A stretch of 63,977 bases of DNA, counting the filler, from Reticulomyxa filosa (lineage: Eukaryota; Protista; Foraminifera), in assembly GCA_000512085.1 (NCBI GenBank). It is 25 parts of 25 records of this genome, joined end to end, with 100 filler letters (N's around TTAATTAATTAA, not from the genome) between each part and the next. Parts side by side here need not be neighbours in the genome. Positions count along the whole stretch, not along the records: positions 15,679 to 20,780 come from ASPP01014832.1; 24 more parts are not named here. One strand, given 5' to 3'. The translations under genes and the position numbers were made by a program. Position 1 is the first letter of the stretch. Each line of letters opens with the position of its first letter. Positions 15,679-20,780 of the stretch are shown here, one piece after another. The notes under the pieces were generated by a model. That model had not been told where the DNA came from and searched no databases. It saw only the letters and a program-made list of their open reading frames with translations.

Positions 15679-15836
15679 CCGCCAGTTGATTGAAAAATTC
15701 CTTGATAGTCTTTGATATGAAATCTATGTTTCTCATTTATAAGTTCTCTTATTAGTTAGTTACCTAAGAGAACTTATATTATTTGCCTGATATAGGCCAT
15801 TCTAATTCCTTTCTTCTCCTTAACTTGACGCGTATG
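15679..15836 (-). mobile_element. Left end of an IS4-family (IS231-like) insertion sequence with transposase N-terminus
   Basis: Minus strand begins CATACGCGTCAAGTTAAG (15836-15819), similar to IS231-type terminal IRs (CAT...TCAAxTTAAG). An ORF from 15736 (MRNIDFISKTIKEFFNQLA...) runs off the contig and resembles N-termini of Rickettsiales IS4 transposases as I recall them. Confidence 0.65.
15738..15778. repeat. Perfect 14-bp inverted repeat (hairpin) just upstream of the transposase ATG
   Basis: TATAAGTTCTCTTA (15738-15751), a 13-nt loop, then TAAGAGAACTTATA (15765-15778). Confidence 0.9.
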
Positions 15837-15853
15837 GTTCTTTAAACGCTCCC

Positions 15854-18800
15854 CTATTTCAAGCAAAAATCATATCTATCTTTAGGTAAAGACTCTCCTT
15901 TTTTTATAGCTTCATACACGGAAGTAAGCCTGAACGCTTCTTTTAATTGCTTCAAAGTTAAATCAGCGGGAATGTCAGCCTCATCGGCGAAAGCCCTAAC
16001 TCGGCTATATTCTTCAACAAATGCCTTGGCGCTTTTTAAAGCATTCTGCGTATCAGAAAGATTTTCTGTATTCTCGGCTTTTACAACAAGAACAGACTTT
16101 ATTGTATCAAGCGCATTCAATCCTTTTTCCAATTCGGCTTTTTGCTCAGAAAACCAATCATAAATAAGGCGGTCTTGATATTTTAAAACATTGTATAAAC
16201 GGGTTCCATAAGTAGGGAATTTAAGGGTATCATTGCGCAACGCATCATAAAACGACACGGCGCTTTTCAAGCTCTCGATATCGGTTTCTATGCCGCAATA
16301 GAAATTCGGCAAAAGTGTTTTATAAACTGCATTCTGGGCTAATGCTTCAACACCAGCGCAATAATTAATTAAAGATTCAATCCGTACCGCTACCGCAGAA
16401 TAATCCTTTTCCTTTTTATTCTTTGCAAACTTGCGATAATCCAACAATGCCAAACGCCATTGAGAGGATAAAATACTTAATATTCCCTTGTTTTTAAATG
16501 CCTGTTGAATTTCTTTTAGACGCTCAATTGGTAATACTTTGTCTAACTCAAAATGCTCTTTTAATGCGGCTTGCTCATCGCACAGTTCTTTAACTTTAGT
16601 GGTGATTTCAGGCAATGCAGGATTGCCTATAGCGTTTTCAATGACAGGATTTCTGTATGATAAAATCGTCTTGTCTATGGCACTGCAAATTCCTGCACCA
16701 TGAGTAATAGCGCGTAACGCCTTAATAGAGTTTATTTCCTCTCCAAGGTTTAAATAACCAGCGGCTTCTTTAAATAATGCGATTGTCTTTTTAAAATCAG
16801 CAATAGCATGGATTGCTTTCCTTGTTATACCGTACATTTCTTGGAAAGTTAGGGCTTCTGGCAGCCTCACATCGTCAATGCTCACGCTTCGGCTAAATTT
16901 ATTAAGCTGCTCCTGCTGAATTTTGCAGGCATCCATAGCTTCTGAATAGCTTTCCAGATGGTTCTTATATGTTTCTACCAGTATTATAGTATGTTTCAAC
17001 AAAGGCTCAATTTCATCCAATTTCAGCAATTCATACAGATTCGCTTTATTAAAATCTTCCAGTGAAAATTCAGCCAAGCCTGATGCTAACGATGGAAAAT
17101 CACCAAAAGAATAATCTTGGAAACCTTTGCTTTCAATATGCGCATATGCTGTGCGTGCTTCACTTGCTGTACCAGCAAGTTTTTGCAAGCCCGTAAAAAT
17201 ATCCTGCTGCAAAGCCCAATCTGCAGGACCTTGTATATTTAAGCCAAACCAATAATGAGTTTTAGTTTTATTTTCGCCTCCAAAATAATCCCTGAAATTA
17301 TCTGCTAGATTCCTTATTAATTCTATATGCCCGCGCAACTCAGCAATTGTAGTTTCAGCGACGTTCTTCGGGGCAGTATAGCTCTCAGCCTTGTATGGCT
17401 GAGATAATTCTTTATAGAGAGCTTCTGTTTTCCAGAAGATTTGATGTGGCGTTTCTTCCGTTTTGCCATACGGGGCATTTATAGCTTCAGTATATTGAAT
17501 TAATTTTTGCTTTTTTTGATTTAGTTCGCTCAAGCACATATCCGCAAGATTCGCGGCTGCTTTGTAGCTGTTGGTATTCATATCCAGCCGCTTTTTTAGG
17601 TCATTCATCATGGTCTTCTTTTGCGTTTTATGGCTATGTAGTTCTAAGCAAAAATTGCCAAGATTAACGCTGTCAAGTCGCTTCCTTACTACTTCTAGTG
17701 CGGCCAACTTTTCTGTAACGAATAAAACAGTTTTGCCCTCCGCTAAACAGGCTGCAATCAAATTGGTAATGGTTTGTGATTTTCCCGTTCCAGGCGGACC
17801 TTCTACTACAATGTTTTTGCCACGCAAAACATCTATAATCGCACTATGCTGAGAACTATCAGCATCCATTACATGAGGAAGTTTTGGCAAAGTCTTGTCA
17901 TTATCAATATCAAAGTCAGCGGCGACGTTTCCATCACCCGAATGATTCCCTCTAAAAATATCAACGATAAGGGGTGTGTCGGCTATGCCACTAACCTCAG
18001 GCCAACGCGCAGGGTCTAAATCCAAATACATCAGCATTTTGCCGAATGATAAAAAGCCCAGAGTTATAAAGCGTTGAATTGCCCAATCTGGCTTAATATC
18101 AGTCAGTATTTTTTCTAATGCAGAAAAATATTCTTCAGGAGATTCAAAGCCTTCAAATGAAGGTAATTCAATAGCAAATTGCAGTAATTTTTCACGCAGG
18201 CAAATATTATCTAAAATATCTTCCCCTGTATATTTAAGATGAAATTTAGCATATCCAGTTTTGGAGTCTACTTTCTGGCGCTCAATTTCAACTGGAATCA
18301 TAATTAGCGGTGCCTGATTAAAAATATCAGAATTATTGCTATCAGACCACTTCAGAAATCCTAGGCATAAAAAGAGCATATTAACGCCAGATTCTTCAAC
18401 TGCAGTTCTTGCTTCCGATTGAATTCTTCTTGCTAAACGGTCTAAATCTTCTGGGTATAACAAGGTCTGCAGCTTATCATCATGATGATAAGGTTTGCTA
18501 GATTTTGTAATAGCCTGCATTTCCCATTCCGTGGATATAGCTAAATTCTTTGCATGGGTCTTAACGTCTATTTTCAATAGATTTTTTTTGTCTTCAATAT
18601 CTGGATAATCACTTTTTTTTGGTAGTTGTACCGGAGAAAGAATAAAGCCGCCTTTAGAGTCACTATCGGCGCTACTTAGAAGCTCTGTATATATATGGTT
18701 TGGTAACTCGTCCACAAAGCGGATGATTTTGGCGCTAGTGTGCTTGAAATTAAGCAGTCTATTGCGCCCACTCAAATCCAATAAGTCTCTGCGGGTTTTC

Positions 18801-18856
18801 TCTAAACCATCGCGAACAATTTTTCTTAACTCATCTAGGTTTTGTGGATTGCTCAT
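15854..18856 (-). CDS. Bacterial DUF4011 + SF1 (UPF1/DNA2-like) helicase, Hhe-like, C-terminally truncated (possible pseudogene)
   Basis: DUF4011 motifs LLDLSGRNRLLNF, EESGVNMLFLCLGFLKW and APLIMIPV. Helicase motifs DADSSQHSAI, Walker A VEGPPGTGKSQTITNLIA, VLFVTEKLAALEVV and CLELHSHK. Intronless, 1000 aa. No Walker B (DEASQ), second RecA domain or Vsr-like nuclease before the stop. Confidence 0.88.
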   Translation of the reverse strand: MSNPQNLDELRKIVRDGLEKTRRDLLDLSGRNRLLNFKHTSAKIIRFVDELPNHIYTELLSSADSDSKGGFILSPVQLPKKSDYPDIEDKKNLLKIDVKTHAKNLAISTEWEMQAITKSSKPYHHDDKLQTLLYPEDLDRLARRIQSEARTAVEESGVNMLFLCLGFLKWSDSNNSDIFNQAPLIMIPVEIERQKVDSKTGYAKFHLKYTGEDILDNICLREKLLQFAIELPSFEGFESPEEYFSALEKILTDIKPDWAIQRFITLGFLSFGKMLMYLDLDPARWPEVSGIADTPLIVDIFRGNHSGDGNVAADFDIDNDKTLPKLPHVMDADSSQHSAIIDVLRGKNIVVEGPPGTGKSQTITNLIAACLAEGKTVLFVTEKLAALEVVRKRLDSVNLGNFCLELHSHKTQKKTMMNDLKKRLDMNTNSYKAAANLADMCLSELNQKKQKLIQYTEAINAPYGKTEETPHQIFWKTEALYKELSQPYKAESYTAPKNVAETTIAELRGHIELIRNLADNFRDYFGGENKTKTHYWFGLNIQGPADWALQQDIFTGLQKLAGTASEARTAYAHIESKGFQDYSFGDFPSLASGLAEFSLEDFNKANLYELLKLDEIEPLLKHTIILVETYKNHLESYSEAMDACKIQQEQLNKFSRSVSIDDVRLPEALTFQEMYGITRKAIHAIADFKKTIALFKEAAGYLNLGEEINSIKALRAITHGAGICSAIDKTILSYRNPVIENAIGNPALPEITTKVKELCDEQAALKEHFELDKVLPIERLKEIQQAFKNKGILSILSSQWRLALLDYRKFAKNKKEKDYSAVAVRIESLINYCAGVEALAQNAVYKTLLPNFYCGIETDIESLKSAVSFYDALRNDTLKFPTYGTRLYNVLKYQDRLIYDWFSEQKAELEKGLNALDTIKSVLVVKAENTENLSDTQNALKSAKAFVEEYSRVRAFADEADIPADLTLKQLKEAFRLTSVYEAIKKGESLPKDRYDFCLK

Positions 18857-19054
18857 GTAATTTTCATAGTTGTTTTAGTCAGTTGGCTGCCTCAAATCAT
18901 TTATTAAACGATTAAATCTGCAAACCTATACTGAGCAGCTTGCTAACTTAATTATGAATTAAATAATATTTTTTGGTCGGCAATTCGTATCCCAAAATCT
19001 AACACATCTTGGTAATGCTTTGTTCGCAACACACTGATTAGGGGGAATTAAATA

Positions 19055-19798
19055 ATGGGAGAGTATAAGGTATTTAAAGTATTAGTGGTTGTTGTGTTGT
19101 GCATATGTTTGTCAGGATGTGGAGCAACGCAGAAGCTGATAAAGCATGGTAACCTTGAAGTTGAGACAAAGATGTCTGATACAGTATTTTTGGATCCTAT
19201 ATAGGAAGAAAAAAAGATAGCGTTATTACAAATAAAGAACACAACGGACAAGAAAGGACTAGAGATAGAAGGCTCAATAAAGGAGGTGATAAAGGGGAAA
19301 GGATATAAAATTACCAATAATCCGAATGAGGCTCAGGTAATGATACAGGTTAATATATTGCAAGCAGGGAAAGTCCAAGGTGCAGATCCATTTACAGCAC
19401 TAGCTGGCGGTTATGGAGGAACTTTTGAGGGTATAGGAACTGGTGTAATGCTAGGAGGAGCAGTAGGTGGTAGTGGGTGTGATATGTTAGGTTTAGGTTT
19501 GGCAGGAGGAATTGCAGGCACGATAATAGATGCTGCAGTAGAGGTGGTGAAATATTCAATGATAACTGATTTACAAATTAGTGAGAAAGCAAGTTCTGAT
19601 ATAGTAACAGAGAGTAGCAAAGCGAAGCTAAAGCAGGGGACAAGCGGATATAAGAAATCGAAATGGGAAGAGAAGAGTAATTGGAAAAGATATCAAACCC
19701 GGATAATAAGTGTGGCAGAGCAAGTAAATTTAAAATTTGAGGAAGCAGAAGGAGAATTAACAAAAGGATTAATTCAATCCATATCTGGTTTGTTATAA
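19055..19798 (+). pseudogene. traT: TraT surface-exclusion/complement-resistance lipoprotein, interrupted by one in-frame TAG
   Basis: ATG at 19055 follows a G-rich RBS. Translation MGEYKVFKVLVVVVLCICLSGC (lipobox LSGC) GATQKLIKHGNLEVETKMSDTVFLDPI*EEKKIALLQIKNTTDK...KGKGY...IQVNILQAGK, glycine zipper, YSMITDLQISE, WKRYQTRIIS.A.QVNLKFEEA. This follows F-plasmid TraT end to end. TAG at 19202-19204. Confidence 0.92.
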
Positions 19799-19899
19799 GC
19801 TTATGATATTACTTGAATTGAAGTGAAAGAAAGTACTATACTATATATAAGGCAATATGGGTTTTATATAAAAATCAACAAAAGAGAAAAGGTTATATT

Positions 19900-20463
19900 A
19901 TGAAAAGAATAATAGTCTTATTAGTAGTTATGTTGGTTAGTGGTTATTCGCTTAATGTAAGTAGTATGGGAAGGAATGATGTGCTGGTTGGCAGAGTGCG
20001 GGTAATAGATGGAGATACGATGGATATGGATGGAGTCAAAATAAGACTGAAGGGTATAGATGCCCCCGAGCTTAGACAGACATGTGGATTAATAGAAGAA
20101 GGGAAGAAAGAATATTTTCCATGTGGAGGGTATGCGTCATTGCATTTGGCAAAGATTATTGATCATAATCGTATAAAATGCAGTAATGAAGGGAAAGATA
20201 AATACGGACGTATATTGGCCTATTGTTATCTAAATGAGATAAATATAAATCAAAAGATGGTAAGGGATGGTTATGCGAAGGCGTGTTCTAAATGCGATAA
20301 GAGTTTTATACAAGAAGAAGAGCTAGCTAAGAAAGAGAAGGCAGGGTTGTGGCATAGTGAATTTGAAGATCCAGCAGAATGGAGAAAAAAGAACAAAGGC
20401 AAAAAGAAGAATCAACATAAAGATATAAGCAATCATTTAAAAGAAAAGCAGCATGCTCAATAG
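19900..20463 (+). CDS. Thermonuclease (SNase-like) family nuclease with signal peptide
   Basis: Motifs VRVIDGDT, IRLKGIDAPE, DKYGRILA, INQKMVRDGYA and AKKEKAGLW...P.EWRK. Hydrophobic N-terminus. Confidence 0.93.
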   Translation: MKRIIVLLVVMLVSGYSLNVSSMGRNDVLVGRVRVIDGDTMDMDGVKIRLKGIDAPELRQTCGLIEEGKKEYFPCGGYASLHLAKIIDHNRIKCSNEGKDKYGRILAYCYLNEININQKMVRDGYAKACSKCDKSFIQEEELAKKEKAGLWHSEFEDPAEWRKKNKGKKKNQHKDISNHLKEKQHAQ

Positions 20464-20532
20464 CGATCCTTTCATGAGTTCAATGAGTTGAGAGCTTTTG
20501 CTTAGTAAGTATATTTAATCCAGCAAAGTAGT

Positions 20533-20780
20533 TTAATAAGTATCTATAATCATTTGAATAAGCTCATCAAAAGAGAGTATAGGAATAGATGCTAAGTATT
20601 CAATATCTGTAAGCTCCTTATTTGGTTGTAAACCTGTAATCTTTATAGACTCAATTTTAGAGTCTTTCTCGTTTATTATAGGAGCATTTTTTATATCTTT
20701 TATATCTTCGTTTTTCAAAAATTCACTCTCTTGAGGGTTTGGATGAATGAGTTCATCTCCATCAATCAATTTATCTAATT
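20533..20780 (-). CDS. 3' end of a bacterial hypothetical protein (5' part lost at contig end)
   Basis: Frame stays open to the contig edge and converges on the SNase gene. No motif recognised. Confidence 0.5.

What the first reader, a model, noticed from the sequence alone, without database searches (positions are those of the whole stretch)
15679..20780. Bacterial contig inside a protist assembly: decaying conjugative/defence island, probably endosymbiont
Seen: 5.1 kb of intronless, densely packed genes without microsatellites, unlike every other contig. Order is IS4 end, DUF4011 helicase, then divergently traT and an SNase. Known: TraT and SNase-type nucleases are typical F-like conjugative-element genes, and DUF4011 helicases are defence-island genes. 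Inferred: a mobile element of an intracellular bacterium (Rickettsiales/Holosporales-like, from the IS N-terminus and AT bias) co-assembled with its host and now eroding. A module pairing an anti-phage helicase with surface exclusion and a secreted nuclease could block incoming DNA at several layers. This is the best candidate here for an undescribed system.
Basis: partly seen in the sequence, partly recalled or inferred. Interest (0 to 1): 0.8.

Follow-up and report, generated by a model that had tools for sequence, protein, structure and literature searches.

The report
Decayed mobile-gene remnant from foraminifer endosymbiont
This 5.1 kb contig in the Reticulomyxa filosa assembly is most likely a decaying variable region of the foraminifer's already published Midichloriaceae (Rickettsiales) endosymbiont, holding half an Hhe anti-phage helicase, a traT gene with a stop codon and one intact secreted nuclease, and the three do not form a new defence system.

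Summary
The piece is the whole contig ASPP01014832.1 of the Reticulomyxa filosa assembly. The three main genes are real.

- **Hhe:** the N-terminal 1000 aa of a DUF4011 Hhe-type anti-phage helicase. Full-length relatives have about 1700 aa. The second helicase domain and the nuclease domain are missing.
- **traT:** a lipoprotein gene with a single in-frame TAG at codon 50.
- **SNase:** an intact 187-aa thermonuclease with a signal-peptide-like N-terminus and all five checked catalytic residues.
- **"IS4 end":** 175 bp with no detectable relative, so it could not be confirmed.

TraT falls in a well-supported clade whose named members are all Candidatus Midichloriaceae. TraT and SNase both have their best plasmid match on the Ca. 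Bandiella woodruffii plasmid. The piece has 36.9% GC, against 37.5% for the Midichloriaceae endosymbiont of R. filosa published by Castelli et al. (2024).

The neighbourhood does not recur. I found no SNase or Hhe near TraT in 44 loci, no TraT, Hhe or tra genes near 80 SNase relatives, and no TraT or SNase near eight loci (three lineages) of the closest full-length Hhe.

The "undescribed multilayer system" reading is not supported. Interest is low.

The parts
15679..15853 (.). Unassigned left end, not Hhe-derived. It holds a perfect 14-bp inverted repeat (15738-15751 / 15765-15778). On the minus strand a 19-codon open frame starts at ATG 15736 and runs off the contig edge. On the plus strand an 11-codon frame entering from the edge stops at 15713-15715.
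   Evidence: Translations. Inverted repeat I11. No relative in any fetched locus and none in a degenerate-pattern scan of viral contigs. A 19-codon open frame at this base composition is expected by chance roughly one time in four (my own estimate).
15854..18856 (-). N-terminal 1000 aa of an Hhe-type DUF4011 anti-phage helicase. The DUF4011 domain covers aa 25-224 and the Walker A motif GPPGTGKS is at aa 353-360, followed by the long helical insert. The gene is truncated: the rest of AAA_11, AAA_12 and the MTES_1575 nuclease domain are absent. The break lies between about 15857 and 15897.
   Evidence: Pfam, PADLOC and NCBIfam results. Relatives at 55-59% identity are 1678-1702 aa long and carry AAA_12 and MTES_1575. 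All alignments end at aa 975-978. A 97%-identical metagenome contig reaches 15898.
18857..19054 (.). Divergent intergenic region of 198 bp between Hhe and traT. It is AT-rich (32% GC). It is too short for the HTH regulator and the 116-aa gene that precede traT in related intact elements.
   Evidence: Nucleotide similarity to relatives begins only inside traT, at 19113.
19055..19798 (+). traT gene for an outer-membrane lipoprotein, with lipobox LSGC at aa 19-22. It is interrupted by one in-frame TAG at 19202-19204 (codon 50), where relatives have Glu. The rest of the frame is intact.
   Evidence: PF05818 matches both pieces. Translation and alignment. Relatives are 62-70% identical. The deposited 240-aa model skips the 21 nt that hold the stop.
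19900..20463 (+). Intact SNase/thermonuclease-family gene of 187 aa, with a hydrophobic N-terminal signal-like segment and a Lys-rich tail. The residues matching S. aureus nuclease D21, R35, D40, E43 and R87 are all present.
   Evidence: PF00565, E 2e-19. Alignment to PDB staphylococcal nuclease chains. Best relatives are 43-49% identical.
20533..20780 (-). Open frame of about 81 codons that enters from the right contig edge. It is AT-rich (28% GC), matches no family and has no relative. It may or may not be a real gene.

Best explanation
[quoted passage not shown] It is a variable, mobile-DNA-derived region in decay.

- **Hhe:** a horizontally acquired single-gene defence system. It has lost its C-terminal ~700 aa, which hold helicase motif II onward, the second RecA-like domain and the Vsr/MTES-type nuclease. 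It cannot work as a helicase-nuclease.
- **traT:** in the closest relatives this gene heads an F-type tra operon. Here it has a nonsense codon just after its lipoprotein signal and has no tra genes beside it.
- **SNase:** the only gene that still looks functional. It probably acts on its own as an exported Ca2+-dependent DNA/RNA nuclease.

The three genes are neighbours through rearrangement and deletion, not because they cooperate.

Shown: gene identities, the breaks, the TraT phylogeny, and the lack of recurrence of the neighbourhood. Inferred: assignment to the published symbiont, the history of deletion, and SNase activity.
For: - **Source:** the contig is R. filosa ASPP01014832.1.
- **Symbiont already described:** a Midichloriaceae endosymbiont of R. 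filosa was assembled from the same host's reads. It has 1.306 Mb and 37.5% GC (PMC10847448). The piece has 36.9% GC.
- **TraT phylogeny:** the window sequence sits inside an 11-row clade (support 96/99) whose named members are all Midichloriaceae. A Rickettsiaceae sequence branches outside it, within a 13-row clade supported 100/97.
- **Best plasmid matches:** TraT (65.7% aa) and SNase (43% aa) both match the Ca. Bandiella woodruffii plasmid best. That plasmid is itself IS-riddled and lacks tra genes.
- **Hhe truncation:**
- **traT stop codon:**
- **TraT context in relatives:** the closest TraT relatives (68-70%) sit directly upstream of traL-E-K-B-V-C...U...H-G-traD.
- **SNase context in relatives:** a 48%-identical SNase lies between traG and traD in another F-type cluster.
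- **No recurrence:** 44 TraT loci (709 kb), 80 SNase loci (517 kb) and 8 Hhe loci (165 kb) show none of the other two genes nearby.
- **SNase catalytic residues kept:**
Against: - The published symbiont assembly is on Zenodo and could not be compared directly, so the assignment rests on phylogeny, GC and host.
- The original reads are not public in the run index. The TAG in traT and the Hhe breakpoint could therefore not be checked against reads and might be assembly errors.
- Hhe's nearest relatives (55-59%) come from unnamed metagenome contigs with 42-50% GC, not from Rickettsiales. That gene says nothing about the host bacterium.
- A 1000-codon frame without any internal stop means the truncation is recent, or the fragment is still under some constraint. 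Against about 95%-identical metagenome fragments I counted 19 synonymous and 21 non-synonymous differences.
Confidence: 0.8

Rival explanations
1. The three genes form a functional multilayer anti-DNA module. Hhe would block phage, TraT would exclude conjugation and the secreted SNase would degrade incoming DNA.
For: All three families have a known or plausible role against incoming DNA. The genes are tightly packed. The SNase looks active. Intact relatives of the TraT element carry a defence-like NB-ARC/TPR NTPase in the slot upstream of traT.
Against: Hhe lacks half its helicase core and its nuclease domain. traT has a stop at codon 50, and a restart downstream would lack the signal and lipobox. 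The neighbourhood was not found in 44 TraT loci, 80 SNase loci or 8 Hhe loci.
Confidence: 0.03
2. The contig comes from a different bacterium in the culture, either a free-living contaminant or food bacterium or a second symbiont, and not from the published Midichloriaceae endosymbiont.
For: There is no direct match to the symbiont assembly. Hhe relatives come from non-Rickettsiales-like contigs. A freshwater metagenome holds 92-97%-identical Hhe fragments but nothing on traT or SNase. Mobile genes are poor taxonomic markers.
Against: The TraT clade has only Midichloriaceae among its named members. Both TraT and SNase match a Bandiella plasmid best. GC and third-codon-position GC are uniform across the three genes and fit the symbiont.
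Confidence: 0.08
3. The contig is bacterial DNA transferred into the foraminifer's nuclear genome, a symbiont-to-host transfer now decaying as a nuclear pseudogene block.
For: The genes are broken. The contig was kept in the host assembly and given eukaryote-style gene models.
Against: There is no eukaryotic flank, no microsatellite and no intron on the piece. A 3-kb and a 0.56-kb frame are fully open, which is unexpected for old nuclear pseudogenes. A symbiont that explains the contig is documented.
Confidence: 0.05
4. The breaks are assembly or sequencing artefacts. In the living bacterium traT is intact, and the Hhe gene continues on another contig because the join at about 15857-15897 is chimeric.
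For: The break in traT is a single base difference from a Glu codon. The contig is short and comes from a 2013 draft. The Hhe frame is otherwise flawless.
Against: Substitution errors are uncommon in consensus sequence. Bandiella shows the same pattern of orphan traT and SNase on an IS-riddled plasmid. Castelli et al. note ongoing gene loss in this symbiont, for its type IV secretion system.
Confidence: 0.1

Closest known systems
Hhe single-gene anti-phage defence (DUF4011 SF1 helicase with a Vsr/MTES-type endonuclease; NCBIfam NF042953, PADLOC Hhe / PDC-S37)
   Same: The DUF4011 domain, the Walker A P-loop and the long helical insert align over profile positions 2-954. Identity to full-length relatives is 55-59%.
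   Different: The window gene stops at 1000 aa, whereas relatives have 1678-1702 aa. It lacks the second half of AAA_11, AAA_12 and the MTES_1575 nuclease. It scores 662 bits against a family cut-off of 2000. In relatives the gene sits in integrase or recombinase islands, not beside traT.
TraT surface-exclusion lipoprotein (PF05818), specifically the Midichloriaceae/Rickettsiales TraT clade
   Same: It aligns over the full length and has the lipobox. It is 62-70% identical to relatives and sits phylogenetically inside the Midichloriaceae clade.
   Different: It has an in-frame TAG at codon 50. No tra operon follows it, whereas the closest relatives are followed directly by traL and traE. It has the longest terminal branch in its clade, 0.29.
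Staphylococcal-nuclease-like thermonucleases of alphaproteobacterial plasmids and F-type tra clusters
   Same: The SNase fold family, with catalytic D21/R35/D40/E43/R87 equivalents and an N-terminal export signal. Best matches are on the Bandiella plasmid and between traG and traD on low-GC contigs.
   Different: Identity to any relative is only 43-49%. It has a Lys-rich C-terminal tail. Here it is not inside a tra operon.
Ca. Bandiella woodruffii plasmid NZ_CP110821.1 (Midichloriaceae symbiont of the ciliate Euplotes)
   Same: It carries both an orphan traT and a thermonuclease gene among many IS copies, toxin-antitoxin genes and no tra operon. It is the best plasmid match for both window genes.
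   Different: The two genes lie 27 kb apart there, and the plasmid has no Hhe.
F-type (RAGE-like) conjugative elements of Rickettsiales seen in metagenomes (L007, L045-L052)
   Same: Their TraT is 68-70% identical. They carry defence and addiction cargo: an NB-ARC/TPR NTPase, AbiEii, Fic and Phd.
   Different: They keep the whole traL...traG-traD operon and a DnaA_N-type replication gene. The window keeps none of these.

Membership tests
Hhe anti-phage system | N-terminal DUF4011 domain | tested here: met
   PF13195, E 4e-36, aa 25-224.
Hhe anti-phage system | Complete SF1 helicase core (AAA_11 and AAA_12, both RecA-like domains) | tested here: not met
   Only AAA_11 profile positions 3-136 of 257 match, and there is no AAA_12. 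Relatives have both.
Hhe anti-phage system | C-terminal Vsr/MTES_1575-type endonuclease domain | tested here: not met
   Absent from the window. PF18741 is present in all full-length relatives.
Hhe anti-phage system | Whole-protein score above the NCBIfam cut-off | tested here: not met
   662 bits against a cut-off of 2000. The match covers profile positions 2-954 of 1797.
TraT (PF05818) | Family domain over its full length | tested here: met
   The two pieces match profile positions 1-17 and 47-213 of 214. The stretch between them aligns to relatives.
TraT (PF05818) | Lipoprotein signal with lipobox cysteine | tested here: met
   LSGC at aa 19-22, aligned with the conserved Cys of relatives. 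This was read from the sequence; no signal-peptide predictor was run.
TraT (PF05818) | Uninterrupted reading frame | tested here: not met
   TAG at 19202-19204.
F-like conjugative element / RAGE | Relaxase, coupling protein and mating-pair-formation genes | tested here: not met
   None on the 5.1 kb. Because the contig is short, absence from the wider element cannot be shown.
SNase / thermonuclease (PF00565) | Domain match with the catalytic and Ca2+-binding residues | tested here: met
   E 2e-19. Equivalents of D21, R35, D40, E43 and R87 are present in the alignment to staphylococcal nuclease.
IS4-family insertion sequence | DDE transposase and terminal inverted repeats | tested here: inconclusive
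   Only 19 codons of an open frame lie on the piece. No relative and no second end were found.
Midichloriaceae endosymbiont of Reticulomyxa filosa (Castelli et al. 2024) | Sequence identity to the published assembly | not testable with these tools
   The assembly is on Zenodo only.
Midichloriaceae endosymbiont of Reticulomyxa filosa (Castelli et al. 2024) | Same host assembly, matching GC and Midichloriaceae gene phylogeny | tested here: met

The most novel reading that the evidence does not exclude
The position directly upstream of traT may be a cargo hotspot for defence genes in Midichloriaceae F-type conjugative elements. Intact relatives carry an NB-ARC/TPR STAND NTPase there, and this contig carries Hhe. 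On this reading the contig records such an element collapsing inside an obligate symbiont, with only the exported nuclease kept, perhaps co-opted for scavenging nucleic acid in the host cytoplasm.
Probability: 0.1. Interest if true: 0.35.

Novelty: new member of a known kind. Interest (0 to 1): 0.12.

Why it matters
It matters little beyond curation. The result shows that bacterial symbiont contigs remain in the R. filosa nuclear assembly under eukaryotic gene models. One of them hides a bacterial stop codon inside an invented 21-nt intron. It also adds one example of defence and conjugation genes eroding in a protist endosymbiont, alongside the degraded Bandiella plasmid. It does not reveal a new defence system.

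Tried and rejected
- **Sequencing runs:** the only run holding any part of the piece is a 2025 freshwater metagenome. It covers only Hhe, in short contigs at 92-97% identity. I could therefore check neither read depth, nor the TAG, nor the Hhe junction.
- **IS identification:** a 19-aa query is too short for the search for related loci. A degenerate pattern scan of viral contigs found nothing. tblastn and blastn against all fetched loci, including the Bandiella transposases, found nothing.
- **Right-edge ORF:** no Pfam, NCBIfam, PADLOC or Atlas lead.
- **Internal deletion of the tra operon:** I considered a single deletion between traT and SNase. In the element with the closest TraT, the traG-traD slot holds a lytic transglycosylase rather than SNase. 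No flanking nucleotide similarity survives either. The deletion scenario stays an inference.
- **Selection on the Hhe fragment:** the synonymous and non-synonymous count against the metagenome fragments (19:21) is too weak and too mixed to show selection.
- **Not run:** structure prediction, complex prediction and the large representative search. The families are clear and no claim here rests on absence of relatives for those proteins.


Full report
**What the piece is**

Places 15679-20780 are the complete 5102-bp contig ASPP01014832.1 of assembly GCA_000512085.1. One of its gene products is filed in public databases as "lipoprotein YlpA [Reticulomyxa filosa]". The piece has 36.9% GC and no N. 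It holds no tRNA, no Rfam match and no microsatellite.

**The helicase gene**

The minus-strand ORF 15854-18856 (1000 aa) has a DUF4011 domain (E 4e-36) and the first part of an AAA_11 helicase domain. It matches the curated Hhe anti-phage models. NCBIfam NF042953 scores E 2e-198, but only over profile positions 2-954 of 1797, with 662 bits against a cut-off of 2000. PADLOC Hhe and PDC-S37 also match.

The nearest relatives are 55-59% identical and 1678-1702 aa long. They carry AAA_12 and the MTES_1575 nuclease domain in addition. Every alignment to them ends at window residue 975-978. A 97%-identical metagenome fragment reaches 15898. The break therefore lies between about 15857 and 15897.

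Walker A (aa 353-360) is present. Helicase motif II onward, the second RecA-like domain and the nuclease are gone. As a helicase-nuclease the protein cannot work.

**The traT gene**

traT (19055-19798, plus strand) has a lipoprotein signal with lipobox LSGC and matches PF05818 over its full length. One in-frame TAG sits at 19202-19204, where relatives have Glu. TAG is also the ordinary stop of Hhe and SNase on this contig, so there is no sign of recoding. A restart at the GTG at 19286 would give a protein without an export signal.

**The nuclease gene**

The SNase gene (19900-20463) is intact. It has a hydrophobic N-terminus and keeps the equivalents of staphylococcal nuclease D21, R35, D40, E43 and R87.

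**The two contig ends**

The "IS4 end" could not be confirmed. The left 175 bp contain a perfect 14-bp hairpin. A 19-codon open frame on the minus strand runs off the edge. An 11-codon frame on the plus strand is equally open to the edge. At this base composition, such short open frames are expected by chance about one time in four (my estimate). No similarity to any fetched locus or pattern scan was found.

The ORF at the right edge has no relatives either.

**Whose DNA it is**

- Of 72,556 plasmid records, the best match for both TraT (65.7% aa) and SNase (43% aa) is the plasmid of Candidatus Bandiella woodruffii. This is a Midichloriaceae (Rickettsiales) symbiont of the ciliate Euplotes.
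- In a scan of one genome per prokaryotic species, the closest TraT genes are in Ca. Bandiella numerosa and Midichloriaceae MAGs (61-67%). Rickettsiaceae follow at 52% and Gammaproteobacteria at 49% or less.
- In a maximum-likelihood tree the window TraT sits inside an 11-row clade (support 96/99). All named members of that clade are Midichloriaceae. A Rickettsiaceae sequence branches outside it, within a 13-row clade supported 100/97.
- Castelli et al. [quoted passage not shown] It has 1,305,893 bp, 37.5% GC and 1445 genes. The piece's 36.9% GC fits this, and the third-codon-position GC of 31-33% is uniform across the three genes.

That assembly is on Zenodo and could not be compared here. 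The assignment is therefore an inference, though a strong one.

Hhe tells nothing about the host bacterium. Its relatives lie on unnamed metagenome contigs of 42-50% GC.

**Is the neighbourhood a system?**

I searched outward from each of the three genes.

- *From TraT.* In 44 TraT-bearing loci (709 kb) there is no SNase or Hhe within 10 kb. The closest relatives (68-70%) share a conserved layout. It runs DnaA_N-type replication gene, NB-ARC/TPR NTPase, HTH regulator, a 116-aa gene, TraT, then the full F-type operon traL-E-K-B-V-C...N-U-TrbC-N-F-H-G, a lytic transglycosylase and TraD, followed by AbiEii, Fic and Phd cargo. Other members of the clade are orphans. One is on the degraded Bandiella plasmid. 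Another lies between hslV and ligA in a housekeeping region of a Midichloriaceae MAG. This agrees with published evidence that traT is often chromosomal (PMC11733297).
- *From SNase.* The 80 best metagenome relatives (517 kb) have no TraT, Hhe or tra gene nearby. One 48%-identical relative does lie between traG and traD in an F-type cluster on low-GC contigs.
- *From Hhe.* Three lineages of the closest full-length relatives (8 loci, 165 kb) sit alone in integrase or recombinase islands, with no TraT or SNase.

Nucleotide similarity to relatives is confined to the coding sequences. It begins at 19113 and ends at the traT stop.

**Most likely history (inferred)**

This looks like a variable region of the symbiont that once held conjugative-element genes and a horizontally acquired Hhe. 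Rearrangements removed whatever followed traT and cut Hhe. traT then picked up a nonsense mutation. The small exported nuclease survived. The Bandiella plasmid shows the same end state.

The flawless 1000-codon Hhe frame suggests the truncation is recent. The comparison with about 95%-identical metagenome fragments gave 19 synonymous and 21 non-synonymous differences. That is too weak to show selection.

**Limits**

The host's reads are not in the public run index. The only holder is a freshwater metagenome with fragments of Hhe alone. The interrupted traT was searched as separate pieces only.

**Verdict**

The "undescribed multilayer system" is not supported. The genes are new, partly broken members of known families, and interest is low.

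Noticed in passing
window 19181-19204: The deposited R. filosa protein model for traT (240 aa, 'lipoprotein YlpA') omits exactly the seven codons VFLDPI-stop. That 21-nt stretch begins with GT and ends with AG. A eukaryotic gene predictor evidently invented a mini-intron to skip a bacterial stop codon.
   Followed up: yes
L045 1-20750, L050, L051 (ENA metagenome scaffolds GROS21-1); L007; L049: These loci share a conserved F-type conjugative element, apparently Midichloriaceae-like. TraT is the first gene of the tra operon. An NB-ARC/TPR STAND NTPase and an HTH regulator lie just upstream. AbiEii/DUF6088, Fic and Phd cargo lie after TraD.
   Followed up: partly
L016 9121-12924 (Midichloriaceae MAG CAZJPD010000008.1): A TraT 67% identical to the window's lies in a housekeeping context: gltX, hslV, traT, ligA, dnaX, thrS. 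There are no tra genes within 10 kb. In this family traT is therefore not always a conjugation gene.
   Followed up: partly
window 15898-18366: A 2025 freshwater metagenome run (coded X1) holds short contigs 92-97% identical to the Hhe gene but nothing on traT or SNase. A 42-nt stretch (15818-15859) also occurs there, with unlike flanks on both sides.
   Followed up: partly
L008 2897-3442, L009 6665-7210 (NCBI assemblies GCA_029980045.1 and GCA_029980125.1): An SNase 48% identical to the window's sits inside an F-type tra cluster. The order is TraG, two unknown genes of about 465 aa, SNase, an RDD-domain protein and TraD. The contigs have 32-34% GC and the organism was not determined.
   Followed up: partly
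window 15738-15778: A perfect 14-bp inverted repeat with a 13-nt loop ends one base before a possible minus-strand ATG (15736). It also lies 22 nt after a plus-strand stop (15713-15715). It could be a terminator or a translational hairpin, and this is undecided.
   Followed up: partly
L002 and L044 (Ca. Bandiella woodruffii plasmid NZ_CP110821.1): This 72.7-kb plasmid is typed non-mobilizable. It is packed with IS1, IS5 and IS6 copies, group II introns, toxin-antitoxin pairs and a hemagglutinin-repeat gene. It also carries an orphan traT and a thermonuclease gene. It is a close analogue of the decay state seen in the window.
   Followed up: partly
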